From the IMG/VR virus record IMGVR_UViG_3300017963_000192, positions 124,001-188,000 of that record: DNA of 64,000 nucleotides; one strand, 5' to 3'. Made by a program: the position numbers and the translations under genes. A model generated the notes under the pieces. It saw only the letters and a list, made by a program, of their open reading frames with translations. It searched no databases and had not been told where the DNA came from. Shown here one piece after another: positions 61 through 53,277 of the stretch (position 1 is its first letter; every line of letters starts with the position of its first letter).

Positions 61-89
61 AATTTATTATAAAAGTTACAGTTTGTCAA
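61..89 (-). promoter_or_regulatory. sigma70-like promoter firing out of the left window edge
   Basis: TTGACA (89-84), 17 nt, TAAATT (66-61); AAGGAGG RBS at 46-40. Confidence 0.5.
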
Positions 90-90
90 T

Positions 91-125
91 AAAAAAACCC
101 TTCTAAAAATAAGGAGGGTTTTTTT
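91..125 (-). terminator. intrinsic terminator closing the RNA array (possibly bidirectional)
   Basis: A7-CCCTTCT..AGGAGGG-T7 hairpin flanked by A and T runs, just downstream of the last pentamer tract. Confidence 0.75.
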
Positions 126-223
126 ATTGGTTTTCTGTTCAATTCTGCTCAATTCTTATCTCTTCTGTTCAGTTCTCGTCATATCTTTTCAGCTCTTGCC
201 ACCTCACTTCTTTTAACTAATTT

Positions 224-270
224 GACCAGCTAAGTAATGAACTTAGAAAACTTCTTTAAAAGTTCTGGTC
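224..270 (-). repeat. tRNA-like separator repeat (copy 4)
   Basis: GACCAG-AACUUU uaaa GAAGUU-uu-CUAAG uucauua CUUAG-CUGGUC. Confidence 0.8.
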
Positions 271-363
271 TTTTCTACTCTTAACTTCTCAGATCTAAAC
301 TATTCAAATCTCGTCTACTCTTAACTTGCCTGATCTAGTCTGTTCCTATCTTATAACTAATTT

Positions 364-410
364 GGGCAGTTAGGTAACGAACCTAATTAATTTCTTTAAA
401 AATTCTGCCC
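364..410 (-). repeat. tRNA-like separator repeat (copy 3)
   Basis: GGGCAG-AAUUUU uaaa GAAAUU-aa-UUAGG uucguua CCUAA-CUGCCC. Confidence 0.8.
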
Positions 411-518
411 TCCTCTGTTCTGGACAATTCTTTTCTTTCCTATTCTTTACTCATCAAAACTATCCTACTCTACTCATGTCTGCTCTTTTCTTCTCTCCTC
501 TTTCCATTTAACTAATTA

Positions 519-565
519 GGGCAGCCAAGTAATGAACTTGAACAATTCCTTTAAGAATTCTGCCC
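519..565 (-). repeat. tRNA-like separator repeat (copy 2)
   Basis: GGGCAG-AAUUCU uaaa GGAAUU-gu-UCAAG uucauua CUUGG-CUGCCC. Confidence 0.8.
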
Positions 566-704
566 TCTTTGCTATTCTTGTCTTCTCAGATCTAAACTAT
601 TCAATTCTCGTCTATTCTTAACTTGCCTGATCTAACCTGATCTTATCTTATAACTAATTTGGGCAGTGGAGGATTAGAACCTCCACTAACAAACCAAAGT
701 TATA

Positions 705-1448
705 TTAACCAACCTTTGCCCAATTCTTATCTTTGATAACTGGATTAAATGGTTCAATGGTGTCTGATGCAACAATGCCTTTAATTGAATATGTTCCATA
801 TGTTCCAGAATTTTCCGGTCTCCAGGCACCGTATCCAGATAATGCTCCAGCTTTTACTATTATCTCAGTCATTTGTTCTGGACTAATAACGTTTTCATCA
901 AAAGCAACTCTTAAATTTAAAGTCCAATCAGAAAACATTGCTCTGTAAAAAGGCACCAAACTCCCTTTCTTACCACCGAGATTTCCAAGTTCAATGCTTT
1001 TATCGTACTTTTTATATTTAATTGGAATTAAACCTCTCCTTGCTGTAGGAACTACAAAAATAGCCGCCTCTAATGCTTTTTTCATTTTTCTTCCTAGGAG
1101 ATTTTGACCAACATTTACAAACGATTTTTTAAATCCTATTGCAGGTACTCCTACTAAACCTTTTTTTTCATCGAGCCAATGAGCCTTTCCTTTACATTCC
1201 TCATCAGGGTCAACTGCTTTGGTTCTTTTAAGGATTTTATTTTTTTCTTTTTCAAAATCTTCTCTTCGCTCTTTTAAAAGATTTTTTGATTTTGCGTTTT
1301 GAAGAAGCTCTGTTTGCCCTTCAATAACAAACTCAATCCACGAAATAAATCGAGATGGCTCTATAATATTTAGATTATCTTTTACAGAGCCTCCCTTTTT
1401 TTCTGCTTTTTTGCCTAATTCTTGTACACTATCCTTTTTCTTTGGCAT
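705..1448 (-). CDS. stand-alone Cas7/RAMP-like RNA-binding protein (Vipr-like)
   Basis: RAMP-style motifs: N-terminal strand IEGQTELLQN, GVPAIGFKKS (cf. IPgsslKG), YRAMFSDW, Gly-rich loop GALSGYGAWRPENSGTYGTY; GAGG RBS. Confidence 0.75.
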   Translation of the reverse strand: MPKKKDSVQELGKKAEKKGGSVKDNLNIIEPSRFISWIEFVIEGQTELLQNAKSKNLLKERREDFEKEKNKILKRTKAVDPDEECKGKAHWLDEKKGLVGVPAIGFKKSFVNVGQNLLGRKMKKALEAAIFVVPTARRGLIPIKYKKYDKSIELGNLGGKKGSLVPFYRAMFSDWTLNLRVAFDENVISPEQMTEIIVKAGALSGYGAWRPENSGTYGTYSIKGIVASDTIEPFNPVIKDKNWAKVG

Positions 1449-1474: not shown

Positions 1475-2101
1475 TTAAATCAAAGGCTCATATTCATTCA
1501 CAATTTCTTGTAAAATACTAATCACCTTTTTTAATCTTTTTTCTATTGCTATAAAATGTAAATTTGCTTCACAATCATTTATAAGTGCTTTAGCTAATTT
1601 AACATATTGTAATGCTTGTTTCTTATCATCTATAATTATATCCGATAAATATTGAATCCTTTTATATTTTTTGTTAGATGTTGTTTTTACTCCATGAGAG
1701 CTATATTGAACAGGTATCTCTTTAAGAGAGTGTTTTATTATTTTATTGGCTGGTGCTTTTATTCTTGGTATAGGAACAAATGTAATAGACCTTTCTAATT
1801 GAGATATTTCTCTTGAAACATAAAGCAAATGCCCTTTCTTTTTATCCATAGTTAGAAGCTTGTGTATTTCTCTAAAATTATTAGAATCATATTGCTTTAT
1901 TAACATCTTTGCTATTTCTTTTGTAGTTTCTGCTCCAGTTTCATTTAAAAATTTGTAATAATCTTCTATACAAAGATTTTCATCAATATTTTTGCTTATC
2001 GCTTTTTTATGAAAAAAACTTTCTTCTTTGAACTTCCAACTTTTAATTTCGATTCCAATGTCATTTAGTTCTTTTTTTATAGACGATGTAAACTTAACCA
2101 T
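1475..2101 (-). CDS. conserved phage protein, putative partner of the Cas7-like protein
   Basis: co-oriented 26 nt upstream of the RAMP gene; IHKLLTMDKKKGHLLY..ISQLERSI resembles the LHxxFEWDDxxAAxxYRxxQARxLIRSI family I recall beside such genes. Confidence 0.55.
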   Translation of the reverse strand: MVKFTSSIKKELNDIGIEIKSWKFKEESFFHKKAISKNIDENLCIEDYYKFLNETGAETTKEIAKMLIKQYDSNNFREIHKLLTMDKKKGHLLYVSREISQLERSITFVPIPRIKAPANKIIKHSLKEIPVQYSSHGVKTTSNKKYKRIQYLSDIIIDDKKQALQYVKLAKALINDCEANLHFIAIEKRLKKVISILQEIVNEYEPLI

Positions 2102-2123: not shown

Positions 2124-2160
2124 GTACATTAAATATACATTACTATTATCCAATAGTCAA
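2124..2160 (-). promoter_or_regulatory. sigma70-like promoter for the RAMP operon
   Basis: TTGACT (2160-2155), 17 nt, TATATT (2137-2132); shares 20 nt with the promoter at 6926-6962. Confidence 0.7.
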
Positions 2161-2178
2161 GTATTTTTTAAAAAAATT

Positions 2179-2246
2179 AAAAACCACCTTCTTATAAGAG
2201 GGTGTTTTTTTAACTAAAAAAACCCCCCTGTTTCCAGAGGGGTTTT
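2179..2246 (-). terminator. tandem intrinsic terminators after the major capsid gene
   Basis: two GC hairpins (CACCTTCTTATAAGAGGGTG; CCCCCCTG..CAGAGGGG), each with an A-run on the + strand. Confidence 0.7.
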
Positions 2247-2277
2247 GTTAAAGACTAAATTATATCGTAGTTAGAAT

Positions 2278-3454: not shown

Positions 3455-4153
3455 TTATGATAATCTCATTTGAAATTGAAGTTCAGGATCGTTGGCTGAT
3501 GGAACCTTTGTTACGAATCCTATTGTGACACCAGTGCCACCTATAGTTGGAAGACCGTTTGCACTAACTGTAACTGCTGCATTTAATGCCCAAGCAGCGT
3601 CAGTTTCATAAGCCAATGTAGCAATCTCACCAGAACCTTCAATAATCGCAGCACGACCACTACCAAGAGTCTGATCTATTCCTGTTAGATTAGGATCTTG
3701 ATATCTATAGTCAATTAATACAGTTTCAGTTGCACCGATACTTGAACCACCTCCAGCGTGGGTAATTATACCATTAGTTGCATTAACAGTATAGTCAGTA
3801 GTTACGGTGTAAGCGGTTCCATCAGAATCTGTTACTCTAACTGATGCACTTTGGATATTTGCGTTATTCAAAGTTATTGTTGTACCAGAACCTGTAAATG
3901 TTCCACTTTCATCAATCACAGGACGATAGAAACTAGTAGTCTTGTGGCAGAAAAACATACCAATAATTTTAATGTCGGCTGTGTTATCTGCAACTTTAGC
4001 TAGTCCAGTAGTTCCATCAAGAGTTGCAATATAACCTGCAATGAAGTCCGCAGAAGAATCTACGTCTCTCCATCCAGATATTATGTTGCCGCTCAGTTTA
4101 CGAACAGAATTAACAATTCCATTCCTCCCGATTGGGGGCAATACTGTACTCAT
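3455..4153 (-). CDS. head decoration/cement protein with inserted beta-rich domain
   Basis: between scaffold and capsid; Gly/Thr rich; DQTLGSGRAAI, IGFVTKVPS; insert TTDYTVNATNGIIT. Confidence 0.65.
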   Translation of the reverse strand: MSTVLPPIGRNGIVNSVRKLSGNIISGWRDVDSSADFIAGYIATLDGTTGLAKVADNTADIKIIGMFFCHKTTSFYRPVIDESGTFTGSGTTITLNNANIQSASVRVTDSDGTAYTVTTDYTVNATNGIITHAGGGSSIGATETVLIDYRYQDPNLTGIDQTLGSGRAAIIEGSGEIATLAYETDAAWALNAAVTVSANGLPTIGGTGVTIGFVTKVPSANDPELQFQMRLS

Positions 4154-13251: not shown

Positions 13252-13723
13252 TATGAAAAACTATTTTTTCTTTTGACTCCTCTTCAAGAGGAAAATCTTC
13301 ATATTTAAATATATCTGGCATATCTTCTGGGACATCAACAGTTTTTTTGTTTGATGCAACATCTAACATCTTTAAAATTTCATCATATATTTTAGGATTT
13401 GGATTTTTTACACCTAAACTTCTGGCTACTTCTTTAAATTTATCTAAATTAATAAAAGGAGATGCCTCTAATTCATTGTTTATAATGTATATATAAGCCT
13501 CTATATCATTTCTCCAATTAGGTAAATGCCCATACAAATTTTCTAGCTTTCCCCAAGTAACATCGTAGTATCGACTATCTGCTTTTCTATCTAATACTTT
13601 GTTTATAAGATTTGACAATCTTATTTCATCTCGTATCCGAGACGCTATGTCTCTTCTTTTTTTAGAAGATAACAATTTATTGATGTCTACAGCATTTCTA
13701 AAATTCATATTATAATTCCTCAA
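13229..13723 (-). CDS. putative internal head protein
   Basis: MNFRNAVDINKLL motif; RKAD site. Confidence 0.55.
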   Translation of the reverse strand: MRNYNMNFRNAVDINKLLSSKKRRDIASRIRDEIRLSNLINKVLDRKADSRYYDVTWGKLENLYGHLPNWRNDIEAYIYIINNELEASPFINLDKFKEVARSLGVKNPNPKIYDEILKMLDVASNKKTVDVPEDMPDIFKYEDFPLEEESKEKIVFHSEKHKGE

Positions 13724-16700
13724 ACGATTTTTTTAACTCATCATTTAATAGGTGTGGATAGTCAATCCATAATCTTAAATTTTCTACAAATATAAGTACT
13801 TCATCTGTTTCGTGACCGTTAAGACACTTACCATTGACATCCCACAACTTACCTTGTTTTAACTTATAATTAACTTCGGGACTATCCTTGAATTTTTCAC
13901 TTAATTTAAAACCTCTAGGATTATCTGGATCATCAGATATTGGTTCAATTTGATTGAAAACTTTGTATGTACTCATTTCTTCTTGAGATAAATCAAAATT
14001 GCTTTGTTTAAAAGCTTTTCTTATAACTTTTTCATTAGAGTCATTTACAACTGTTATATGTTTAAGTAGACTTTCAGTAAAACTACACTCTTCCATACCA
14101 ACCCAATTAGATATATAGAGATTTTTACCTTGATTAAAGACAGGAATCATTCCTTTCTTTTGAATTTTTTCATAAGAAAGAGTATTCCTAATTAAATTGT
14201 TTTTAGCATCTTTATCCGGTATATCACTATATTTCTTCTCTAGTTTTTCTTTTTGACTTGTCTCCCATTCCTCTAAATCAACAACATCTAACACAAAAAT
14301 TATATTATCATAATCTTTCTTTATAAACTTACCCACTTTATTTAAAAACCTAGAAAGTTGAGGAATATATTCAATAGGACAATCCTTTACATTTATTCCA
14401 GCTATTGAATGTGAACGATGTCTTTGAATATGAGGATCAACATTGTTTCCAAATTCTTCATCATCAAATCCTTCAATACAAGGATACATTATCAAAATTT
14501 CGTTTTTAGCAGAAATTATAGAACCTAGATTTCTACCTTTGCTTAACAATTGTTTAACACCATATCTTAAACCATCATTTTTAACGACATTACTTAATTT
14601 AACAGTATAAACCCCTTGTTCCTGGTACCCTTTTAACTGTCCGTATGCAAAGCAAGTGTTACCAAGATTTCTTAAATGTTTGAAAATTTCAGATTTATCT
14701 AAATTTGAAGATGCAAACATTTTAGTCCATTCCTCAAATTCTCTTGATAGCATTAAATCAGAATAATCTGTTAAATCATCACTATCAGAATAATATTCCT
14801 GATGTATAGGGTAGAATTCAGTAACGCTATATGAATGGAGTTTGCCTTGTTTATATAAATTGGTGAGTATTTTAGAAATATCTTCATTTTCTTGAAGTAT
14901 CCCCTCTTTAAAATCACCATTGCTCTTTTTATCAATCACACTTAATTTATTATTTAAATTAATTAGTAATAATTTAACTTCAGAAGGTATACTAGGTGAT
15001 TCAAGATTTTTGAACCAAGTATCATCATCAACAGGATGAAGATTTTTAGTTATTTCACTATCAAAGTCAGCTTCTTTAACTTTTATTTCTTCTGGACTTG
15101 GTTTAGCTGTTTCAACAGTTCCCTCTTTTCCAATAAATTCTCTTGATTCAGATTCTAAGTCTTCAATATCTTCTTTTGAAATTTCTTCTGTTTCTGCTGT
15201 TTTTTTCTTACCAAGTCCCAACTTGTCTTTAATCTTTGCCGTAACACTACCCGTAGGAGGAGGTGTTCCACCAAGAGGTGAGCCAACACCAGCAGCACTA
15301 CCAACTAATGGATGAATAAAAGCACCAATCTTTTCTTCGAGTTCTTTTTGTTTCTTTTTATTACTTAATTCGTCTTCTAAGCTCATCCCCATTAATTGAA
15401 GAAGTGTTATAGCACTTATAGGTCCTTTACCTTGAGCATAAACATTATTCATAAAAGTCATAAATGCTTGGTCGTCACGCATCATTAATTTTTTATGCCA
15501 TAGTATTTTAGGAACAATGAGACGTTCTTCTAATTCTCTTCCAGATCTACTTACTCTGTATTGTCCAACTAATTCTTTCTTGTCCCTTCTGTACCAATTA
15601 TTTTTCTCTGCCATTATTCTAAAAAATTTATCTTGTATCCAAAGTACTTGAAATAAGTCTCTTTTAGCTTTATACCTTGATAGCTGAACTTGAAGACCAA
15701 CATTTGCTGAATTATATGTTCCTACATTATCAACAAGATAGCTATGGCTGTTTTCAACAGTTAAATTATAAACTTTTTTAGTATTTTTAATCGATTCAAC
15801 AGATTTTACCATTAAATAAACATAATTATCATCAACAAATGCTTTTTGTCCTTTAAATTTATGAGAATCATCAAAGTCAAACGTGCATTCTTCTTCCCAA
15901 ATTAATTTTGCCAAATCAAATGCAAATTTACCATAAATATCGAGTCTAATAATTGGTTTTCTTTTATATTTTGAAGTTAAATTTCTCTTATTGTTATCTT
16001 GTATTGTCCAATTAACTGGAAAACCTATTTGAGCTAATATCAATTCGATTTGATTTGCTAAAATTTTTGAGGTGGTAGTAAAATGAACAGTATGTTGTCC
16101 ATTTCTTTTATTTATTTGATGACAACCATCCCCTCTAAAAATTCCTTTAATCAGTTCTTTCTTTAAATTTAAAGACCAGCCCATCACTTCTTTAGATAAT
16201 TGTTTTTTGTGAGAATATTCTCCAGCGTGTTTCTTAAACCAATTTACTTTATCTTTAACTATATTTTGAGTGATTGATCTTAAATGCAGTGCCCCTTGCT
16301 TGTTAGAAAAACTTGAAATTGGAATTCCTTCTATTGCACAAAGATTTGTTACATCATCTATGTATTTACTTTCATTTTCTCCAAAACATAATCTAATTCC
16401 ATGCAATTCTTTTGTGGTGTGGTGCTTTTCATAACAACCTTCAGCTATAAAATAACCAAGAAGTCTGGCTGATGTTTCTGTAGTATTTGTATCAACTTCT
16501 ACAAAATTTCTTGGAATCATTAAGTAATCCCATTGTTTGATTTCTTCTGCTTTTAATTTCTTAATAGGGTTATAATTTATAGGTAATCCACTTATATATT
16601 TTTTTCTAATTGTTGTCCTTCCTATATCTATTGGATTTAATTTAATTCTTGGTGATTTTCCAATAGAATGAGCGTAGAGTTTGCCCGCATTAACCTCACG

Positions 16701-18068
16701 ACCACATCCACACGCACATTTACGAGGCCATGTCCACACAGACCACTTGTGATTATCAGTACATTTAAACTTCTTTCCTCCCCAAAGGGTTATTTCAATT
16801 ATATTGTTAGGAATCCCCTCGTCCCAATTATCTGTAACTTTTTGTTCCATACCATCTTTATCAATAACAGAATCCCCTACTTCAATATCTTCAACGTTTT
16901 TATATCCTTGAGGAGTTGTGATTTTTGTACCTTTTGTAAAACAAGCATAAGTTGATTCCCCACTTAAAAATTGTTTTCCTACTCCAAGAGCAACCATTTT
17001 CTTCTCTGTAATGTCTGACCACTCTTTTTCAAGTCTCATAACCTTGTCTGCAACAGTAACATATTCAACATTTAAGCCATAATGATAGATTAAACTAAAG
17101 TTTGGGTCGAAAGTTGACTGTTGTAACATTTGAGCCAATGCTCTTTGGTGCGTTTCGTTAGGAATCCACCCCTTGTTAGCGTCACCTAGTTTAAAAATCT
17201 TTAAAGGATAGATAAAGTTGTCAGCAATTGTGATTTGAGCCTCTCTTAATTTGTCTTCGTACATCAAAAGCCTAAAAATTCGGCTTATTATTGAAGTTCC
17301 TCTAACATCATAAGGGTTACTTCTTCTTGCAATGTGTGTAACCTCATCTGGATCAAGTGTTATGTTTTTTCCTGTTAAAACTCTTCTAAAAACGTCTTGT
17401 GGGAGTCTTCCTTTAAGTCTTTGATCTTCGGGTTTTGTTGAATGTACTAAAGATTTAAGTTCATCGTCTGGTATAAGCTCAATTACGCTTTCCTGGTCTG
17501 CAAAAGGAGTGAATCTTACTTCAATAAAATCAGGATTATGAACTATAATATCTTCCCACATTCCAGTTTTACTGTTCCAAGGAGTGTGAATGAAAATTTC
17601 TCCAATTTTCATAAATTCCAAGTCTATTGCGGGTAATTTCGAGAAAAATCCTGTTTTTTCAATACATTCTTGAATATGTGTGTTAATATGAGGGTCATCA
17701 ACTACAATTTCTGCTTTTGAATAAGGTAATTCTGCATGAACATCTAAAACGGCTCCTACTAATTCATCATGATCGTAAAACCATCTACACCATCTATTTA
17801 TTTGCTTTAAAGTTCGTGGTAAATAAATAGCTGTGGTAGTAATCTCTGGATCATAGAATCTTCTGGAAGGATTTCTTAATATATTATTTCCCGCACCGTA
17901 TGCGGCAATTTGATTAAGAAGATTTCCACCACCTAATCCCAAAGATTGAAACTGACCACTCGTTCCTTTCTTAATTCTTTCCCTATCTGTTTCAGCATTA
18001 ATTGTTCTTGGTAACATATCCTGAAAACTTTCAGGTAAAGGAACATTTTCTTGATTGATTGTAGGCAT
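13710..18068 (-). CDS. portal protein with intein and long C-terminal extension
   Basis: WCRWFYDHDELVGAVLDVHAELP, THIARRSNPYDVRGTSII, PLKIFKLGD, GESTYA/SANVGLQ. Confidence 0.85.
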   Translation of the reverse strand: MPTINQENVPLPESFQDMLPRTINAETDRERIKKGTSGQFQSLGLGGGNLLNQIAAYGAGNNILRNPSRRFYDPEITTTAIYLPRTLKQINRWCRWFYDHDELVGAVLDVHAELPYSKAEIVVDDPHINTHIQECIEKTGFFSKLPAIDLEFMKIGEIFIHTPWNSKTGMWEDIIVHNPDFIEVRFTPFADQESVIELIPDDELKSLVHSTKPEDQRLKGRLPQDVFRRVLTGKNITLDPDEVTHIARRSNPYDVRGTSIISRIFRLLMYEDKLREAQITIADNFIYPLKIFKLGDANKGWIPNETHQRALAQMLQQSTFDPNFSLIYHYGLNVEYVTVADKVMRLEKEWSDITEKKMVALGVGKQFLSGESTYACFTKGTKITTPQGYKNVEDIEVGDSVIDKDGMEQKVTDNWDEGIPNNIIEITLWGGKKFKCTDNHKWSVWTWPRKCACGCGREVNAGKLYAHSIGKSPRIKLNPIDIGRTTIRKKYISGLPINYNPIKKLKAEEIKQWDYLMIPRNFVEVDTNTTETSARLLGYFIAEGCYEKHHTTKELHGIRLCFGENESKYIDDVTNLCAIEGIPISSFSNKQGALHLRSITQNIVKDKVNWFKKHAGEYSHKKQLSKEVMGWSLNLKKELIKGIFRGDGCHQINKRNGQHTVHFTTTSKILANQIELILAQIGFPVNWTIQDNNKRNLTSKYKRKPIIRLDIYGKFAFDLAKLIWEEECTFDFDDSHKFKGQKAFVDDNYVYLMVKSVESIKNTKKVYNLTVENSHSYLVDNVGTYNSANVGLQVQLSRYKAKRDLFQVLWIQDKFFRIMAEKNNWYRRDKKELVGQYRVSRSGRELEERLIVPKILWHKKLMMRDDQAFMTFMNNVYAQGKGPISAITLLQLMGMSLEDELSNKKKQKELEEKIGAFIHPLVGSAAGVGSPLGGTPPPTGSVTAKIKDKLGLGKKKTAETEEISKEDIEDLESESREFIGKEGTVETAKPSPEEIKVKEADFDSEITKNLHPVDDDTWFKNLESPSIPSEVKLLLINLNNKLSVIDKKSNGDFKEGILQENEDISKILTNLYKQGKLHSYSVTEFYPIHQEYYSDSDDLTDYSDLMLSREFEEWTKMFASSNLDKSEIFKHLRNLGNTCFAYGQLKGYQEQGVYTVKLSNVVKNDGLRYGVKQLLSKGRNLGSIISAKNEILIMYPCIEGFDDEEFGNNVDPHIQRHRSHSIAGINVKDCPIEYIPQLSRFLNKVGKFIKKDYDNIIFVLDVVDLEEWETSQKEKLEKKYSDIPDKDAKNNLIRNTLSYEKIQKKGMIPVFNQGKNLYISNWVGMEECSFTESLLKHITVVNDSNEKVIRKAFKQSNFDLSQEEMSTYKVFNQIEPISDDPDNPRGFKLSEKFKDSPEVNYKLKQGKLWDVNGKCLNGHETDEVLIFVENLRLWIDYPHLLNDELKKSFEEL
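15711..16943 (-). mobile_element. LAGLIDADG intein in portal (411 aa)
   Basis: CFTKGT..KCTDNHKW..LLGYFIAEG..GIFRGDG..VGTYN|S. Confidence 0.9.
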
Positions 18069-35762: not shown

Positions 35763-38700
35763 ATGAATAAGAATGTTTTCAAAACAGCATTTCAAGAGTT
35801 TATATTCGTTAGAACTTATTCTAGATGGTTAGATAAAGAAAACAGAAGAGAGACTTGGGAAGAAGCAGTAGATCGTTATTGTACATATATGAAAGAAAAG
35901 CATGGAGATAAAATATCAGATAAAGAATATAAGGATGTGCATGATTCCATTTTAAATATGGAAGTAATGCCATCAATGAGAGCTATGTGGGTTGCAGGGA
36001 AAGCTTTAGACATTGAAAACTTTTCTGGTTACAATTGTTTGGGAGAAGATACTGAATTTGTTACAGATAAGGGTGTCAAATCTTTCAGAGATTTTAAAGA
36101 CGGTGATAAGATTGTTGTTTTAACTCATAAAAACAATTGGAAGAAAGCTGTAGTTAAAAACTTCGGAAAGCAGAAACTAAACAAGATTACGTATGGTCTT
36201 GGAGGAAGAGGATTAGACAACATTGTCTATGCTACAGAGGATCACAGGTGGTTTTTGAATGATTCTGAAGAAGTTGTTACAGAAATAAAAGAAAAAGATA
36301 ATCTTTTAAAAAGTTGTTACAGAAAAACTTTTGATTTTGATTCTGCAACTCCAGAAGAAAAAACATATTGGTGTTATGGTTTTGTTTATGGAGATGGGAC
36401 TAAAATAAAAAGAAATGGAGAATATAAGCATAGTTTGGTAAGATTATTAGGTGATAAAAAAATATATTTAAATCGTTTTGAAGAAGTTGGTTTTAAAACG
36501 TCTGTGTCGGACAGTATAGATGGGGGTTGTTATGCTTATACTGGAGAATATTTAAAAACGTTACCTAAAATTGAAAAAGAGCCTTTGGGGAAAATAGAGG
36601 CTTTTGTAGACGGTCTTCTTTGTGCAGATGGAGGTAGAAAATATGTAAAAGACAATTTCTATTTTTGCAACATTCAGCAATCTGGAGAGGAGGGTATTAG
36701 TTTTATAAGAAAAGCTTTTCCTATGTGTGGTTATTTTATTGTTAGAGAGGATGATTATACTGGTGAGACTACTAATTATGGAGAAAGAAATAAAACAATA
36801 AGATTTTCTTTTAACAATCCTTACGCTACAGAGTACAATTCGTTGTATACTGTAAGAAAAATTGATGTTAGTTATAAAGAAGAGGATGTTTGGTGTCTTG
36901 TTGTTGAAGATGATAAAAGTTTTGTTTTGAAGAATGGATTAGTCACAGGAAATTGTGCTTTTACAACAATACAAAATCTAAAGGATTTTGCTGAAATACT
37001 TTATATTTTAATGAATGGTACTGGTGTTGGTTTTTCTGTAGAAAGAAAGTTTGTTAATAACCTTCCTTTAATACAGGAAGTAAATACCAACGAGGCAAAA
37101 GAAATGATAACCTTTGCAGATAGTAAATTGGGGTGGGCTAAAGGTTATGAAAAAGTTTTGAATTGTTTATGGAACGGAATTGACTTTGAGTGTGATTACA
37201 GCAAGATTCGACCAAGGGGTTCTCGATTAAAAACATTTGGTGGACGAGCTTGTCTTACAGGCAATACTGTTGTATACAAAGATAGGAAGAAAAGTAGAGG
37301 TTGCAACGAGATTACTATTAAAGATCTTTATGATATGAAGGTTTCAGGTAAAAGAAAACATTTTTCTGAAAGCAATCAACCTGGACCATCCCATTTTAAT
37401 AAGGTAAAATTGCGTTCTTTAGACGAAGAATCTGGAGTATTTTTTAGAAATCAATTAATAGATGTTGTTGACAATGGTGTTGCTCCTATATTTGAAATAG
37501 TAACTGAAAGTGGTTATAAAATCAAAGCAACTTCTAATCACAGATTTATGAAAGATACAGGAGAATGGTGTTATGTATCTGATTTTTCAAACGGAGATTT
37601 GATTGCTATTAATGGTTCTAAAGAAAAGAAGACAGGTGTTTGCATTGATTGTGGTATATTTGTTAGTAGGAGAGCTATAAGATGCAGATCTTGTGCCAAT
37701 AAAAATCAACAAAAAAATGATTGTTTGCCCACAACTGTTAGACAAAGAAAAGAATGTCAAAAAGATAAAAAAGATTTTTGTGAATTGTGTAAACACAATG
37801 GTTCAGTTAGTAAACTTCAAGTTCACCACAAAGACGGAAATCCTTATAACAATAAAAAAGAGAACAAGCAAACTTTATGTGAAAAATGCCACAGAAAAGA
37901 AGATGCTAGACGAACTACTTTTGGTAATCCTTACTCTCATAGATATTTATCTTATGATAAAATAGTTTCTGTTGACTATGTAGGTAAAGAGCAGGTTTAT
38001 GATTTGGTTATGGAGGCTCCTAACCATAATTTCGTAGCTAACGGGTTTGTTTCACACAACAGTGGTCCAGAACCTCTTAAAAATCTTGTTGATTTCACCA
38101 CAGATATAGTTGAACAAAATAGGGGTTATAGAATTCAACCTATAGACGCACACGATATTTGCTGTAAAATAGCAGAAATTGTTGTGGTTGGAGGAACTCG
38201 CAGAAGTGCTTTGTTAAGTTTATCTGATTTAACTGATAATCAAATGGCTCACGCTAAATCTGGAGAATTTTGGAATACAGCACCACAAAGGTCAATGTCA
38301 AATAACAGCGTTTCTTATACAAGAAAACCTGATATGGTTTCATTTTTGGATGAATGGAAAAATCTTTATAAGTCAAAGAGTGGGGAACGAGGGTTTTTTA
38401 ATAGAGTTGCTACTCAAAAAAAAGCTAGTGAGAATGATAGGAGAGATGGTTCTAAAGTTATTGGAACTAATCCTTCATTGAGAAAAGGAACAAAAATAAT
38501 AACAACGGATGGTCTTTTAAACATAGAAGATTTAGAAGGTAAAGAATTTGATATTATTAATCTTAATGGAAAAGTGAGTAAAGCTAAATGTTGGTTATCT
38601 GGTAAAAGCAAAAAATTATACCGAGTTAAATTTGTTGGAGGACACGAATATTATTGTACTGCTGAACACAAGTGGCCTGTTTATGAAGATGGTGAATATT

Positions 38701-41573
38701 TTAAAAAAGAAACCACAGAAATTTTTTCTAATGACTGGATTGCTGTAAATAAAAACGATGCTTTACCTTTTGGGAATCAAGGTAATTACTATGATGGTTT
38801 TTTTATTGGATGGATTTATGGAGATGGTGCTGTAGGTAATAGATCTACTGGTGAAAGAATCACTTCTTTATGTGTTTCTGAAGAAGCATTTAAAATGGGT
38901 ATTGGAGATATTCTTTTAGAAAAGTTGCATATGATAACAGGCGGAAAGCAAAAGTGGATTGATAGAACAGTCGATAAATCAACTTATGAAATGACTATTA
39001 CCAATAAAAAATTAGATGATTATCTTGATTCTTTTGAAGTTAAAAGGAAAGAACACGGTTTACCAAAATTTATTTTTAATAAAGCTAGTGAAGATTTTAG
39101 GAAAGGTTTTCTTGATGGTATTTTATCGAGTGATGGACATATTGAACAATCAACAAAAAATTCATATAGGTTAACCTTTATATCGAGTCATAAAAAAATA
39201 GCAGAGGACATATCAACTCTTTTTGGTATGTATGGTATAAAAAATTCTATTATGTTTAAACAAACTACAGCATCTTTTCCTAACGGAAGAGATTATGATA
39301 GGTTATATAATAGATATACTGTTCGTGTCTCAGATATTCATTCGATGCAACATTTATCTAGTTTACTTTCTTTAAAAAACACTAAAAATGATGAGAGATT
39401 AAGTAGTGTTCAAAACATAGAACCTCGTCATACAATAAACAAAAATAATATTAAAGTTATTAGTGTTGAAGAGACAGATTTGTTTGAAGATGTTTGGGAT
39501 GTTTCTGTTTTTGATGATACTCATTGTTTTCAATTAACTCAATGTGTTACTGGAAACTGTGGCGAAGTCCTCCTTCGGGACAAATCTCTCTGCAATTTAA
39601 CAGAAGTTGTTATTAAGCCAGAAGATAATTTTGATTCTCTTAAAAGAAAGATAAAAATAGCAACTATGCTAGGTACGTGGCAAGCAGCACTTACAAATTT
39701 TAAATTTGGTAGTAAAAAATGGAAAGAGAATTGTGACGAAGAAGCATTGTTAGGAGTATCCTTGACTGGTGCTAGAGATCACAAAATATTGGGAACAGTA
39801 AATGATACTGCAAAGAAATGGATAGCGGATTTAAAGCACATAGCTATTGCGACCAATAAGAAAATTGCACCAAAGATTGGAATTAATAGAGCCGCCGCAA
39901 TTACCTGTATAAAACCATCTGGATGTTTGTCTGTAGATTCTTTAATTACTACAAACGAAGGTATTTTAGAATTACAAGAAATAGGAGATGTTGTTGGAGA
40001 TGCTTGGCAAGATCATAAAATTTATGTTGAGCAAGAGAATTCCGCAGAACTATCAACTAAATTTCATGTTAATGGAGAAAGTCCTACTAAACTTATTCAT
40101 ATGAGTTCAGGAGTTGTGTTGGAATCTACTTTAAATCACAAATTTAGGGTTATGGAAAAAGGCGAGTATGTTTGGAAAGAGGCGAGGGATATAATAAACG
40201 GGGATTGTCTTCCTTATAAAATTGGGGGGTATGCGGGAGGTTCTTACCAAGAGTTAACAAAAGTTTCTCCTCCGTATTGTAATGTTAAAGAAATATTACA
40301 ACCAGAGAAATTAGAAGAAGATTTAGCATACGTTCTTGGACTGTATGCTGGAGATGGTAGTACTCATAAAAAAGGCATACGTATAGCAGGACATATTGAT
40401 AAGAAAGAAAGTTTGTATAAAGCATCAGAAATTATTAAAAGATTTTTTAATATAGATTGTATTATTTATGAAAGAACATCTGGAAATAATGCTGATTTGT
40501 ATGCAAATTCTACTTTTTTATTATCTTTTTTAAGAGCTAATGATTTAGTTAAAAATAAAACAGAACATGTTGAGATTCCATTGGTTATTAGAAAATCTCC
40601 TGCTTCAGTAATAAAAGCATTTGTAGACGGTTTGTTTGATGCAGATGGTTGTGAGTCTTCTAGTGGATACAAAATATTATGTACTGTGTCTGAAAAGTTA
40701 GCAAAACAACTACCTGTAGTTTTAAGATGTCTTGGATATGCTTGTTCTTGTAAATTAATGCCTCCAACGAAATCTTCATTAGGTAATAGGATGAGGTATA
40801 GAATTACAATTGTGAGAGGAAGAGATGGGGAATACAACAAAAGTGGTCTTGGAAAATACTATAAAATGTTGGATGATTTCAATATGAAAAATTTCATACC
40901 AGATATTGTTGAGTATGTTGAAGATAGTCATAGTAACACAGCAGATTTGGAAGTTCCTAATAATAATACATATATTGCCAATTCTTATGTTAGTCATAAT
41001 ACTGTATCCTTATTAGTTGATTGTTCACCAGGGGCACATACTCGGCAAACAAGCACGGGATATTATATAAGGAGAGTTAGAATATCAGCTACTGACCCAC
41101 TATGTTCATTGTTAAGGGAACAAGGTATTCCAGCACTTCCAGAAGTTGGGCAATCAAAAGATAATTGCAGTACATTTGTTTTAGAATTCCCTTGCAAAGC
41201 ACCAAAAGGGGCTAAAACAAAATATGGAGAAACAGCAAAAGAACAATTAGAATATTGGAAGATGTATAGAGATTTTTATTGTGAACACAACCCATCAATA
41301 ACAATTTCTGTTAAAGAGGATGAGTGGTTAGATACAGCAGCGTGGGTTTATAAAAATTTTGATAATATTGGAGGATTGACTTTTTTGCCATCTAGCGATC
41401 ATGTATATCAACTAGCTCCTTATGAGGATATTGATAGAGAAGAATATGAAAAAAGATTAAAAGATTTTCCTAAAAATATAGATTTTAGTGTATTATCAAA
41501 ATATGAAAAAGAAGATGCAACGGAAGGTGCTAGAGAGTTTGCTTGTTCTGGAGACAAGTGCGAATTAGTCTAA
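35763..41573 (+). CDS. nrdJ: class II (B12-dependent) ribonucleotide reductase with four inteins; about 640 aa spliced
   Basis: RTYSRW..ETW, MPSMR, YN/CAF, GTGVGFS, VVVGGTRRSA, TNP/CGE, KPSG/TVS, EHNPSIT, C-terminal CSGDKC. Confidence 0.95.
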   Translation: MNKNVFKTAFQEFIFVRTYSRWLDKENRRETWEEAVDRYCTYMKEKHGDKISDKEYKDVHDSILNMEVMPSMRAMWVAGKALDIENFSGYNCLGEDTEFVTDKGVKSFRDFKDGDKIVVLTHKNNWKKAVVKNFGKQKLNKITYGLGGRGLDNIVYATEDHRWFLNDSEEVVTEIKEKDNLLKSCYRKTFDFDSATPEEKTYWCYGFVYGDGTKIKRNGEYKHSLVRLLGDKKIYLNRFEEVGFKTSVSDSIDGGCYAYTGEYLKTLPKIEKEPLGKIEAFVDGLLCADGGRKYVKDNFYFCNIQQSGEEGISFIRKAFPMCGYFIVREDDYTGETTNYGERNKTIRFSFNNPYATEYNSLYTVRKIDVSYKEEDVWCLVVEDDKSFVLKNGLVTGNCAFTTIQNLKDFAEILYILMNGTGVGFSVERKFVNNLPLIQEVNTNEAKEMITFADSKLGWAKGYEKVLNCLWNGIDFECDYSKIRPRGSRLKTFGGRACLTGNTVVYKDRKKSRGCNEITIKDLYDMKVSGKRKHFSESNQPGPSHFNKVKLRSLDEESGVFFRNQLIDVVDNGVAPIFEIVTESGYKIKATSNHRFMKDTGEWCYVSDFSNGDLIAINGSKEKKTGVCIDCGIFVSRRAIRCRSCANKNQQKNDCLPTTVRQRKECQKDKKDFCELCKHNGSVSKLQVHHKDGNPYNNKKENKQTLCEKCHRKEDARRTTFGNPYSHRYLSYDKIVSVDYVGKEQVYDLVMEAPNHNFVANGFVSHNSGPEPLKNLVDFTTDIVEQNRGYRIQPIDAHDICCKIAEIVVVGGTRRSALLSLSDLTDNQMAHAKSGEFWNTAPQRSMSNNSVSYTRKPDMVSFLDEWKNLYKSKSGERGFFNRVATQKKASENDRRDGSKVIGTNPSLRKGTKIITTDGLLNIEDLEGKEFDIINLNGKVSKAKCWLSGKSKKLYRVKFVGGHEYYCTAEHKWPVYEDGEYFKKETTEIFSNDWIAVNKNDALPFGNQGNYYDGFFIGWIYGDGAVGNRSTGERITSLCVSEEAFKMGIGDILLEKLHMITGGKQKWIDRTVDKSTYEMTITNKKLDDYLDSFEVKRKEHGLPKFIFNKASEDFRKGFLDGILSSDGHIEQSTKNSYRLTFISSHKKIAEDISTLFGMYGIKNSIMFKQTTASFPNGRDYDRLYNRYTVRVSDIHSMQHLSSLLSLKNTKNDERLSSVQNIEPRHTINKNNIKVISVEETDLFEDVWDVSVFDDTHCFQLTQCVTGNCGEVLLRDKSLCNLTEVVIKPEDNFDSLKRKIKIATMLGTWQAALTNFKFGSKKWKENCDEEALLGVSLTGARDHKILGTVNDTAKKWIADLKHIAIATNKKIAPKIGINRAAAITCIKPSGCLSVDSLITTNEGILELQEIGDVVGDAWQDHKIYVEQENSAELSTKFHVNGESPTKLIHMSSGVVLESTLNHKFRVMEKGEYVWKEARDIINGDCLPYKIGGYAGGSYQELTKVSPPYCNVKEILQPEKLEEDLAYVLGLYAGDGSTHKKGIRIAGHIDKKESLYKASEIIKRFFNIDCIIYERTSGNNADLYANSTFLLSFLRANDLVKNKTEHVEIPLVIRKSPASVIKAFVDGLFDADGCESSSGYKILCTVSEKLAKQLPVVLRCLGYACSCKLMPPTKSSLGNRMRYRITIVRGRDGEYNKSGLGKYYKMLDDFNMKNFIPDIVEYVEDSHSNTADLEVPNNNTYIANSYVSHNTVSLLVDCSPGAHTRQTSTGYYIRRVRISATDPLCSLLREQGIPALPEVGQSKDNCSTFVLEFPCKAPKGAKTKYGETAKEQLEYWKMYRDFYCEHNPSITISVKEDEWLDTAAWVYKNFDNIGGLTFLPSSDHVYQLAPYEDIDREEYEKRLKDFPKNIDFSVLSKYEKEDATEGAREFACSGDKCELV
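36036..36953 (+). mobile_element. intein 1 in nrdJ (306 aa, LAGLIDADG)
   Basis: CLGEDT..ATEDHRW..GLLCADG..VTGN|C. Confidence 0.9.
37251..38060 (+). mobile_element. intein 2 in nrdJ (270 aa, HNH)
   Basis: CLTGNT..ATSNHRF..VHHKDGNPYNN..LCEKCH..VSHN|S. Confidence 0.9.
38475..39557 (+). mobile_element. intein 3 in nrdJ (361 aa, LAGLIDADG, Ser1)
   Basis: SLRKGT..CTAEHKW..GILSSDG..VTGN|C. Confidence 0.9.
39924..41000 (+). mobile_element. intein 4 in nrdJ (359 aa, LAGLIDADG)
   Basis: CLSVDS..STLNHKF..GLFDADG..VSHN|T. Confidence 0.9.
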
Positions 41574-52815: not shown

Positions 52816-53277
52816 ATGAATTTTGAACCGCCTGTTGGATATAGGGTGTTAATTATAAGGACTTTAGAAAGAGGTCACGAAATTAAGTATTATCAAGATG
52901 GGAAAGTATTTACATTAGAAAAAGCATTAGAAATAGTTAAGGTAGCAATCCCTATGTTAACTCCAAACAGAGAAGAGAAAAGACAAAACGGTAGACGTTT
53001 CAAAGAAGACGGTGAAGAAATGTTTACTTTAACTGCTCAAGATCAGCATGGAGTGATGGTTAAGGATGAAGCTATTCCTAAAAGAAGAATAAGAAGACTT
53101 ACCCCTAAAGAATGTGAACGTTTGATGGGATTGGAAGATGATTGGACGAGATGGGGTATTGATGAAGATGGTAATGAATATGAAGTCTCGGATACACAAC
53201 GCTATCGGATGGCTGGAAATGGTGTTGTAGTAGACGTTGTAAGAGAGATTATAAGGAGATTGGTTAATGCAAGTTGA
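52816..53277 (+). CDS. C-terminal fragment of a C5-cytosine methyltransferase
   Basis: RRLTPKECERLMG (motif IX), QRYRMAGNGVVV (motif X); no motif I or PC motif. Confidence 0.7.
   Translation: MNFEPPVGYRVLIIRTLERGHEIKYYQDGKVFTLEKALEIVKVAIPMLTPNREEKRQNGRRFKEDGEEMFTLTAQDQHGVMVKDEAIPKRRIRRLTPKECERLMGLEDDWTRWGIDEDGNEYEVSDTQRYRMAGNGVVVDVVREIIRRLVNAS

What the first reader, a model, noticed from the sequence alone, without database searches (positions are those of the whole stretch)
224..721. Array units are delimited by covarying 47-nt mini-tRNA-like elements
Seen: three separators are exactly 47 nt. Each has a 6-bp closing stem, a 6-bp hairpin with UAAA loop, and a 5-bp stem with UUCRUUA loop stacked directly on the closing stem, followed by WAAUUAGUUA. 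Stems show compensatory changes: GGGCAG/CUGCCC vs GACCAG/CUGGUC; UUAGG/CCUAA vs CUAAG/CUUAG vs UCAAG/CUUGG; AAUUUU/GAAAUU vs AACUUU/GAAGUU vs AAUUCU/GGAAUU. The first copy has a near-canonical T-arm (GGAGG UUCUAAU CCUCC) and its 5' strand overlaps the last codons of the RAMP gene. Inference: acceptor+T-arm mimics let host RNase P/RNase Z cut out individual guides, replacing Cas6. Caveat: the coaxial helix is 11 bp, not 12, and three loops lack A58.
Basis: partly seen in the sequence, partly recalled or inferred. Interest (0 to 1): 0.9.

Follow-up and report, generated by a model that had tools for sequence, protein, structure and literature searches.

The report
tRNA-like separators in phage VIPR array
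This is the guide-RNA array of a VIPR system (a recently described phage RNA-guided DNA-silencing system) in a jumbo phage. Its four guides are separated by small, covarying, partly tRNA-like RNA structures, an arrangement the VIPR papers I could search do not describe. These structures probably mark where the long transcript is cut into guides.

Summary
On the minus strand, 721-130, four structured elements (61, 47, 47 and 47 nt) alternate with four purine-rich tracts. All elements fold as described. With three homologous elements from a second jumbo phage, 9 of 13 tested base pairs show compensatory changes.

The locus is a VIPR system (2026 preprints). The upstream 247-aa gene is a Vipr protein: the family profile matches the solved SUSP1 Vipr at E=2e-17, and the predicted fold resembles Cas7-type RAMPs. 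The tracts are vrRNA guides made of 16-19 pentamers with the non-canonical consensus NN-W-G-A; the G is invariant in 89 of 89 pentamers.

So "RAMP gene" and "guides" were right. The tRNA likeness is partial:
- A G1-C closing stem stacks on a UUCR-loop arm to give 12 bp.
- Only the first element scores against the Rfam tRNA model (19.4 bits; threshold 29).
- The T-loop A58 equivalent is missing in six of seven elements.

No internal promoters were found, so vap-vipr-array is probably one transcript that must be cut. Relatives solve this with hammerhead ribozymes, hairpin or pseudoknot tails, or a promoter per guide.

The most likely role is processing punctuation read by host tRNA-processing or other RNases. 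This is untested. Retention as a 3' cap is the main rival. I rate it a new variant of a known kind.

The parts
2132..2160 (-). Sigma-70-like promoter candidate (TTGACT-17-TATATT) upstream of the operon. It lies just after the terminator pair that ends the capsid gene transcript.
   Evidence: 10 of 12 matches. A consensus match only, so this is inference.
1475..2101 (-). ORF of 208 aa, a candidate Vipr-accessory protein (vap). It is conserved and syntenic with vipr in the second jumbo phage.
   Evidence: 42% identity, E=2e-58, to L006 1920-2564. No Pfam, PHROG or PADLOC family. The AF2 model is poor (pLDDT 47) and all-helical.
705..1448 (-). vipr gene (247 aa), a RAMP-fold protein that polymerises on the pentamer-repeat RNA.
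   Evidence: phmmer to PDB 36pp_D, SUSP1 Vipr, E=1e-6. The family profile gives E=2e-17 over the full length. AF2 pLDDT is 85. The top Foldseek hits are Cmr4, Csm3 and type VII Cas7. phrog_4652. 1443 family members in the HMMER library.
661..721 (-). E1, a divergent 61-nt separator. It has a 4/5-bp closing stem, a 7-bp hairpin, and a 7/8-bp arm with the near-canonical T-loop UUCUAAU. It overlaps the vipr stop codon.
   Evidence: Rfam tRNA 19.4 bits. Model R1 22 bits.
566..660 (-). vrRNA 1: a conserved 10-nt 5' handle AAAUUAGUUA followed by 17 NN-WGA pentamers.
519..565 (-). E2, a 47-nt three-way-junction separator.
411..518 (-). vrRNA 2: handle UAAUUAGUUA followed by 19 pentamers.
364..410 (-). 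E3, a 47-nt separator.
271..363 (-). vrRNA 3: handle followed by 16 pentamers. It is 90% identical to vrRNA 1.
224..270 (-). E4, a 47-nt separator whose closing stem shows compensatory changes (GACCAG/CUGGUC).
130..223 (-). vrRNA 4: handle followed by 16 pentamers. It runs into the terminator instead of a further separator.
87..129 (.). Bidirectional intrinsic terminator that closes the operon.
   Evidence: (I1).

Best explanation
The region is the 3' part of a VIPR (Viral Interference Programmable Repeat) operon of a 218-kb jumbo phage. The layout is promoter, vap-like ORF208, vipr, a four-guide vrRNA array, then a terminator.

By homology with the solved SUSP1 system, each guide works as follows (inferred):
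- The guide is a run of 16-19 pentamers, NN-W-G-A.
- One Vipr protomer binds each pentamer and sequesters the constant W-G-A.
- The variable NN dinucleotides are presented to pair with double-stranded DNA, skipping every third target base.
- The target gene of a competing element is thereby silenced.

The 47-nt elements (61 nt for the first) are covarying three-way junctions that stand at guide boundaries: at both ends of every guide in L006, and in the window at all but the 3' end of the last guide, which runs into the terminator. The array has no internal promoters, so the single transcript must be cut. I propose the elements are the cutting signals. Their closing stem and UUCR-loop arm form a 12-bp acceptor/T-arm-like minihelix. 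Host RNase P would cut at its 5' side. RNase Z would cut after the discriminator, or RNase E would cut in the adjacent A/AUU stretch, at its 3' side. The product would be a guide that starts with the conserved AAUUAGUUA handle.

Shown: the structure, its covariation, its position, VIPR membership and the pentamer code. Inferred: co-transcription, the cut sites, and which enzyme does the cutting.
For: VIPR identity
- Vipr homology and RAMP fold.
- Pentamer periodicity is unique in the 64 kb. The best-phase G occupancy is 100%, against at most 56% anywhere else.
- The logo is N, N, A/U, G (89 of 89), A (78%).
- The SUSP1 residues that hold the conserved second G (R138, W178), plus R179, which lines the Y3 pocket, are conserved. 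D177, which reads the first G, is Ala here, matching G to A/U at that position.
- The papers describe the system and its non-canonical repeats.

Elements as boundary or processing signals
- An element precedes the first guide in both phages (E1 overlaps the vipr stop codon).
- In L006 an element also follows the last guide, with no guide after it.
- No promoter-like site lies inside the array, and there is one terminator at its end.
- The distance from element to first pentamer is fixed (1 + 9 nt). The distance from last pentamer to next element varies (0, 3 and 3 nt here; 1 and 4 nt in L006).
- A Vipr relative at 33% identity carries a hammerhead ribozyme in the same inter-guide position. A processing device at this position therefore has a precedent, also reported in the discovery paper.

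tRNA likeness
- G1-C and the junction G-C are invariant, and the discriminator is A in 5 of 7.
- The loop starts UUC in 7 of 7 elements and is followed by a purine (UUCR) in 6 of 7; the closing pair is G-C in 5 of 7.
- The stack is 12 bp in all seven, even though E1 reaches it as 5+7 rather than 6+6.
- The other hairpin is variable in length and loop, like a dispensable insert.
- E1 is the only Rfam tRNA hit. Its E=0.22 covers 4227 families, so it is about 5e-5 for the tRNA model alone.
Against: - No RNA data exist for this phage, so the cut sites are unknown.
- Six of seven elements give no tRNA-model hit even at E<=10, and ARAGORN finds none.
- The U54-A58 pair that defines a T-loop cannot form in six of seven loops, which may simply be 5-nt loops on a 6-bp stem.
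- There is no CCA.
- The nucleotide 5' of the proposed RNase P site is not conserved.
- In SUSP1 and in relative L047 the structured element is a 3' tail kept in the mature guide. Here too, every guide has a structure at its 3' side: the next element, or the terminator.
- Only two phages carry the element, and several copies are recent duplicates, so the covariation rests on few independent events.
- The host, and therefore its RNase repertoire, is unknown.
Confidence: 0.42

Rival explanations
1. 3' cap or tail. Each element is kept on the mature guide as its structured 3' end, the functional analogue of the SUSP1 pseudoknot or the GC hairpins of other VIPR arrays. It would protect against 3' exonucleases and cap the Vipr filament. 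Only one cut is made, between the element and the next handle. E1 exists only to free the first guide from the mRNA.
For: - In characterised VIPR systems the conserved structure lies 3' of the repeat tract and is retained and resolved in cryo-EM.
- Relatives L047 and L045 have a hairpin directly 3' of each tract.
- In both phages every guide has a structure on its 3' side: the next element, or the terminator for window guide 4.
Against: - The spacing between the last pentamer and the element varies (0-4 nt). It is fixed at true tails in SUSP1, L047 and L045.
- The last window guide would then carry a different cap (a terminator hairpin).
- This model still needs a nuclease that recognises the element's 3' edge, so it overlaps with the tRNA-like RNase Z/E idea.
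Confidence: 0.28
2. Phage-encoded processing. Vipr itself (a RAMP, as Cas6 is), or the conserved ORF208, recognises the three-way junction and the AAUUAGUUA handle and cuts there. Host tRNA enzymes would play no part.
For: - Cas6 endonucleases are RAMPs (established knowledge).
- The handle AAUUAG-UA is conserved between two phages whose Vipr proteins share only 50-57% identity, which suggests a specific protein partner.
- ORF208 is conserved and syntenic.
Against: - Vipr resembles Cas7-type backbone subunits, not Cas6.
- None of the three VIPR papers mentions an RNase, tRNA or guide-RNA processing on term searches.
- ORF208 is predicted all-helical and matches no nuclease family, although that model is poor.
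Confidence: 0.13
3. 5' handle. The element stays attached to the 5' end of the following guide and nucleates or caps the filament there.
For: - The register between the element, the handle and the first pentamer is fixed.
- In the window there is one element per guide, each lying 5' of its guide.
Against: - The last element in L006 is followed by a degenerate handle and no guide.
- E1 differs greatly in size from E2-E4, although under this model it would serve the same role.
- Known VIPR filaments are capped at the 3' end.
Confidence: 0.08
4. Self-cleaving ribozyme of an unknown class. It would occupy the position that hammerheads occupy in related VIPR arrays.
For: - It sits in the same inter-guide position as the hammerhead in L018 and in the published type I/V arrays.
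- It is a compact three-way junction with a conserved loop.
Against: - No ribozyme family matches even at E<=10.
- The junction has only two unpaired, non-conserved nucleotides.
- Apart from the UUCRYUA loop there is no conserved unpaired core.
Confidence: 0.05

Closest known systems
VIPR systems (Vipr protein + vrRNA), type II of Escherichia phage SUSP1 (bioRxiv 10.64898/2026.04.26.720920 and 10.64898/2026.04.26.720927)
   Same: - Phage-encoded, with a small operon of a Vipr RAMP-like protein plus an accessory gene.
- Guides are made of tandem pentamers with a constant trinucleotide and a variable dinucleotide, arranged as an array of several guides downstream of the genes.
- The residues that hold the central G are conserved.
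   Different: - The repeat is W-G-A/NN rather than G-G-Y/NN.
- Guides have 16-19 repeats rather than 9-16.
- The vap-like gene lies upstream of vipr rather than downstream.
- There is no 3' pseudoknot tail; a three-way junction stands between guides, and also before the first one.
- A conserved 9-10-nt 5' handle is present.
- Vipr carries about 45 extra residues.
Hammerhead-ribozyme-interspersed vrRNA arrays (VIPR types I and V in the discovery paper; example here L018)
   Same: Guides are co-transcribed and separated by a compact three-way-junction RNA that sits exactly between tracts. The Vipr protein of L018 is among the closest relatives found (33% identity).
   Different: The elements here lack the hammerhead core (CUGANGA, GAAA, GUH) and match no ribozyme family. 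If they are cut, a trans-acting enzyme must do it.
tRNA-like processing punctuation: mascRNA at the MALAT1 3' end, tRNA-linked microRNAs of murine gammaherpesvirus 68, RNase P-processed C4 RNA of phages P1/P7, engineered polycistronic tRNA-gRNA arrays (from my own knowledge, not tested here)
   Same: A tRNA or tRNA-like fold embedded in a longer transcript recruits RNase P and/or RNase Z to release the neighbouring functional RNA. The topology is an acceptor-like stem stacked on a T-like arm.
   Different: Those elements are cloverleaf-like and are recognised by tRNA models, or have been cut experimentally. The elements here are 47-nt minihelix-plus-one-hairpin structures without a proper T-loop (except E1), and there are no cleavage data.
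CRISPR arrays with Cas6 processing
   Same: A RAMP-family effector protein, an array of guides separated by a conserved structured unit, and a conserved 5' handle on each guide.
   Different: There are no cas genes, no unique spacers and no repeat hairpin of Cas6 type. Guides are periodic pentamers read non-contiguously, and two guides are near-duplicates.

Membership tests
VIPR system | Vipr protein: minimal RAMP (RRM core, G-loop, thumb) homologous to described Vipr proteins | tested here: met
   phmmer to PDB 36pp_D (SUSP1 Vipr) gives E=1e-6. A profile of 29 relatives gives E=2e-17 over residues 2-188 of the chain. The AF2 model (pLDDT 85) hits Cas7-type RAMPs at E about 1e-6. The G-loop motif GxGxWRP is conserved.
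VIPR system | Adjacent non-coding tandem pentanucleotide repeats with a constant part and a hypervariable NN part | tested here: met
   Four tracts of 16-19 pentamers. G is invariant (89 of 89 with the L006 tracts), positions 1-2 carry about 0.1 bit, and position 3 is A or U.
VIPR system | Canonical GGY/NN (YNNGG) repeat | tested here: not met
   The consensus is W-G-A/NN. The literature accepts alternative repeats (NNNGG, YNNNG, NNNNG; WGT/NN, TGH/NN), so this does not exclude membership.
VIPR system | Viral location and a small operon with an accessory (vap) gene | tested here: met
   The contig is a 217.7-kb IMG/VR phage with capsid and protease genes next to the locus. ORF208 is conserved and syntenic. 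Its function is unknown.
VIPR system | Guides target foreign DNA by the 1-nt-skip rule, with no self-targets | tested here: inconclusive
   No self-match above shuffled controls in the window or held loci. No natural target was found by exact sub-pattern scans of IMG/VR and GTDB genomes; the hits are at chance level and do not extend.
tRNA / tRNA-like RNase P and RNase Z substrate | Recognised by tRNA models (cloverleaf) | tested here: not met
   ARAGORN finds 0 in the window. Rfam tRNA scores only E1, at 19.4 bits against a gathering score of 29, driven by the T arm. The six other elements give no hit at E<=10.
tRNA / tRNA-like RNase P and RNase Z substrate | Acceptor-type stem stacked directly on a T-type arm, about 12 bp in all, with G1-C72 and a purine discriminator | tested here: met
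   There is no linker between the arm and the 3' closing strand. The stack is 6+5 bp plus the invariant loop U..A, giving 12. In E1 it is 5+7 (or 4+8), also 12. G1-C is invariant. The discriminator is A in 5, U in 1 and G in 1. This rests on secondary structure only.
tRNA / tRNA-like RNase P and RNase Z substrate | T-loop motif U54-U55-C56-R57-A58 closed by G53-C61 | tested here: inconclusive
   UUC is present in 7 of 7, R57 in 6 of 7 and G53-C61 in 5 of 7. A58 is present only in E1; the others have U or C at that position.
tRNA / tRNA-like RNase P and RNase Z substrate | Actual cleavage by RNase P / RNase Z | not testable with these tools
   This needs end mapping and enzyme assays.
Hammerhead or other known self-cleaving ribozyme | Match to a ribozyme covariance model or conserved catalytic core | tested here: not met
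   No ribozyme hit at E<=10 on either array. The same search finds hammerhead type II in the relative L018, at 29.5 bits and E=4e-4.
SUSP1-type vrRNA 3' pseudoknot tail | Conserved ~40-nt pseudoknot in fixed register after the last repeat | tested here: not met
   The SUSP1 tails read differ in sequence and topology. Model R1 finds nothing in the SUSP1 locus. The spacing from last repeat to element varies here.
CRISPR-Cas | cas genes, direct repeats and unique spacers | tested here: not met
   No Pfam or PADLOC Cas family among the ten neighbouring ORFs. The 'spacers' are pentamer repeats, and two of them are 90% identical.

The most novel reading that the evidence does not exclude
The three-way junction is a new class of small self-cleaving ribozyme that has replaced the hammerhead at the inter-guide position of VIPR arrays. 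A less radical reading, which I consider much more likely (about 0.4), is the first natural tRNA-like-punctuated guide-RNA array, matured by the host's tRNA-processing enzymes.
Probability: 0.05. Interest if true: 0.85.

Novelty: new variant of a known kind. Interest (0 to 1): 0.6.

Why it matters
VIPR is a newly described, very compact RNA-guided DNA-binding system that has been proposed as an ancestor of CRISPR effectors. How its multi-guide transcripts are matured is barely addressed in the papers. They report pseudoknot tails, staggered arrays and hammerhead-separated arrays, and say nothing about tRNA-like elements or host RNases.

A natural array that borrows the host's tRNA-processing machinery would be a third way for such a system to obtain its guides, beside Cas6 and ribozymes. 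It would mirror the tRNA-gRNA arrays that engineers built for CRISPR multiplexing. It would also give a ready-made, 47-nt, host-independent-looking module for multiplexed VIPR guides.

The W-G-A/NN repeat, together with the Asp-to-Ala change at the G1-reading residue, adds a testable protein-RNA specificity pair.

Tried and rejected
- **Close relatives.**
  - The word-indexed protein search found only the query itself for Vipr and for ORF208.
  - blastn of the locus against GenBank phages found nothing.
  - Identical copies in other samples carry an identical array, so they give no variation.
- **Pattern and profile scans.** Scans of IMG/VR, JGI metagenomes and GTDB genomes, plus a 3-protein profile scan of IMG/VR, recovered only this contig and one other jumbo phage. 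The six other metagenome hits were chance matches in GC-rich or odd sequence. A 29-protein alignment was too diverse for the locus finder.
- **Natural targets.** No self-target was found. Exact sub-patterns under the 1-nt-skip rule gave nothing, or chance-level hits that do not extend.
- **Rejected readings.**
  - A TRAP/CsrA/Hfq-type protein sponge was my first idea for the 5-nt period. I dropped it once the Vipr homology appeared.
  - Coding sequence was rejected because a period of 5 is incompatible with codons.
  - Per-unit promoters were rejected.
  - Pairing between the loop and the handle (a pseudoknot) was rejected by inspection: the loop and handle differences between the two phages are not compensatory.
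- **ORF208 fold.** The model is too poor to search.
- **Tandem Repeats Finder.** It does not detect these degenerate pentamers.
Full report
**1. What is in the sequence**

The feature lies on the minus strand. Read 5' to 3' from 721 to 87, the order is:

| Part | Coordinates | Length |
|---|---|---|
| E1 | 721-661 | 61 nt |
| Tract S1 | 660-566 | 95 nt |
| E2 | 565-519 | 47 nt |
| Tract S2 | 518-411 | 108 nt |
| E3 | 410-364 | 47 nt |
| Tract S3 | 363-271 | 93 nt |
| E4 | 270-224 | 47 nt |
| Tract S4 | 223-130 | 94 nt |
| Intrinsic terminator | 129-87 | 43 nt |

It has a 6-bp closing stem, a 6-bp hairpin with a UAAA loop, two linker nucleotides, and an arm with loop UUCAUUA or UUCGUUA stacked on the closing stem. 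z is about -3.
- E1 has the same plan with a larger first hairpin and a 7/8-bp arm carrying UUCUAAU. Its 5' strand overlaps the end of ORF 705-1448.
- G.U pairs occur only on the minus strand, so that strand is the RNA.
- Every element is followed by one nucleotide and then AAUUAGUUA (3 matches, 0 expected).

**2. The tracts are not CRISPR-like spacers**

- They are runs of pentamers in a fixed register that starts at the first base after each element. G autocorrelation at lags 5, 10 and 15 is 0.44, 0.42 and 0.40.
- No other place in the 64 kb comes near this periodicity: 100% occupancy of one phase, against at most 56% elsewhere.
- Over 89 pentamers (68 here, 21 in the second phage), positions 1-2 are nearly random. 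Position 3 is A (82%) or U, position 4 is always G, and position 5 is A in 78%.
- S1 and S3 are 90% identical.

**3. What the system is**

- The 247-aa ORF has no Pfam or PADLOC family. It belongs to phrog_4652 and matches one solved structure, the "SUSP1 Vipr protein" (36pp_D, E=1e-6).
- A profile of 29 relatives matches that chain over its full length at E=2e-17.
- An AlphaFold model (pLDDT 85) resembles Cas7-type RAMPs (Cmr4, Csm3, type VII Cas7) at E of 5e-7 to 1e-4.
- The family is large: 1443 representatives at E<=1e-3.

Three 2026 preprints describe the system as Viral Interference Programmable Repeat (VIPR):
- Vipr protomers polymerise on a vrRNA made of 9-16 pentamers, one protomer per repeat.
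- They hide the constant GGY and present the variable NN to pair with double-stranded DNA, skipping every third base.
- This silences competing phages and satellites.
- Non-canonical repeats are already reported: NNNGG, YNNNG, NNNNG, WGT/NN, TGH/NN.

In the pairwise alignment, the SUSP1 residues that cradle the second G (R138, W178), and R179 of the Y3 pocket, are conserved. D177, which reads the first G, is Ala here. That fits G to A/U at that position. This last point is inference from one alignment.

**4. The operon**

- A sigma-70-like promoter candidate (2160-2132, minus strand) follows the terminators that end the capsid gene.
- Next come ORF208, vipr, the array and the terminator. No promoter-like site lies inside the array.
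- ORF208 is 42% identical to the gene at the same position in the second phage, which makes it a vap candidate. Its model is poor and all-helical.
- The surroundings are phage structural genes, and the contig is a 217.7-kb IMG/VR phage.

**5. Comparative evidence for the elements**

- Identical copies in other samples are uninformative.
- The only other carrier found is a 252.9-kb jumbo phage (L006/L010/L021), whose Vipr is 50-57% identical.
- Its array reads: element, handle plus 11 pentamers, element, handle plus 10-11 pentamers, element. The last element is followed by a degenerate handle and no tract.
- On the six alignable elements, 98.7% of cells pair and 9 of 13 pairs change on both sides. 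No shuffle out of 500 reaches this, and slid registers give 26-50% pairing.
- A covariance model from these six recovers the divergent E1 (22 bits, E=0.14). It finds nothing else in the window, the SUSP1 locus or four other relatives.
- Conserved across both phages: G1-C, the junction G-C, AA/UU at the base of hairpin 1, the loop UUCRYUA and the handle AAUUAG-UA.
- Variable: the length and loop of hairpin 1, and the linker.

**6. How tRNA-like are they?**

For:
- The topology is a closing stem continuous with a T-like arm, with the other hairpin where the D and anticodon arms would be.
- G1-C72 is present and the discriminator is mostly A.
- The loop begins UUCR and is usually closed by G-C.
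- The stack is 12 bp in all seven elements, although E1 reaches it with a different split.

Against:
- ARAGORN finds nothing.
- Only E1 scores on the Rfam tRNA model, below threshold and through its T arm. The other six give no hit even at E<=10.
- The A58 equivalent is missing in six of seven elements, so a true T-loop cannot form there.
- There is no CCA.

I conclude that these are acceptor/T-arm-minihelix-like structures, not tRNAs.

**7. What they do**

Relatives of this Vipr solve guide-end formation in four other ways:
- SUSP1 uses a 3' pseudoknot tail.
- L047 uses a GC hairpin directly 3' of each tract and nothing before the first tract.
- L045 uses a hairpin plus a U-run, with a promoter built into the hairpin, so each guide is its own transcription unit.
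- L018 has a hammerhead type II ribozyme between tracts, the architecture reported for VIPR types I and V.

Here the array has no internal promoters, and an element stands before the first guide in both phages and after the last one in L006. The distance from element to first pentamer is fixed, while the distance from last pentamer to next element varies from 0 to 4 nt.

This pattern fits punctuation best. One cut at the 5' edge of the element and one just after it would release a guide that begins with the handle. RNase P and RNase Z are the natural candidates because of the minihelix. The A/AUU stretch after each element also fits the RNase E preference (from my own knowledge).

The main rival is that the element stays on the guide as a 3' cap, as in SUSP1. 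Every guide does have a structure on its 3' side.

No ribozyme family matches, and the junction has no conserved core. Term searches of the three VIPR papers find no mention of tRNA, RNase P/Z or guide-RNA processing, and the language-model survey that mentions VIPR has no occurrence of "tRNA-like". The literature search turned up no other paper on VIPR.

**8. Targets**

- No self-match exceeds shuffled controls.
- Exact sub-pattern scans under the 1-nt-skip rule found nothing, or chance-level hits that do not extend.

**9. Verdict**

The system is a VIPR locus (about 0.95).
- The separators are genuine, conserved RNA structures at guide boundaries (about 0.9).
- They most probably act as processing signals (about 0.65 across all nuclease models).
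- Host tRNA-processing enzymes as the agents is plausible but unproven (about 0.4).
- Relative to the literature I could read, this is a new array architecture and a new repeat consensus within a known kind of system.

Noticed in passing
L001 5976-6049 (same contig, about 530 nt beyond window position 1, same strand as the operon): A tRNA with anticodon CUA (amber suppressor; ARAGORN labels it Pyl). Within the window, TAG ends only 4 of 56 ORFs of at least 120 aa, so stop-codon recoding is neither shown nor excluded.
   Followed up: partly
L006 about 2845-2847 and 3773-3904: In the second jumbo phage the vipr reading frame carries an in-frame TAA. A small downstream ORF ends at TAG with the frame staying open. 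This could be a pseudogene, a sequencing error or stop-codon reassignment. I did not read through it.
   Followed up: no
L018 2513-2849: A Vipr relative (33% identity) has GG-type pentamer tracts separated by a hammerhead type II ribozyme (29.5 bits, E=4e-4). This is an independent example of the published ribozyme-interspersed architecture.
   Followed up: yes
L045 4130-4420: Another relative has NNNGC tracts. Each is followed by AAAUCAUAGG, a covarying hairpin and a U-run. A TTGAC(G/A)-17-TATGAT promoter for the next guide is built into the hairpin, so each guide looks like its own transcription unit.
   Followed up: partly
L045 2644-2849 and 1403-1586: A group I intron hit (61 bits, above threshold) lies just upstream of that relative's vipr gene, with two tRNA genes nearby.
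   Followed up: no
window 566-660 and 271-363: Guides 1 and 3 are 90% identical. Their differences fall mostly on pentamer positions 1 and 5, which suggests they target two variants of one sequence and that position 5 may carry some information.
   Followed up: partly
window 2170-2250: Two back-to-back, bidirectional terminator hairpins lie between the major capsid gene and the VIPR operon. They produce spurious PyrR and leader-peptide Rfam hits.
   Followed up: partly
L012 (Ga0255052_10177380), whole 1041 nt: A metagenome contig almost free of C on one strand, made of G/A/T-rich repeats interrupted by short palindromes. It is unrelated to the finding and was picked up by chance.
   Followed up: no
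window 13710-18068, 35763-41573, 53267-59050: Three very large ORFs (1452, 1936 and 1927 aa) typical of jumbo phages. I did not examine them.
   Followed up: no
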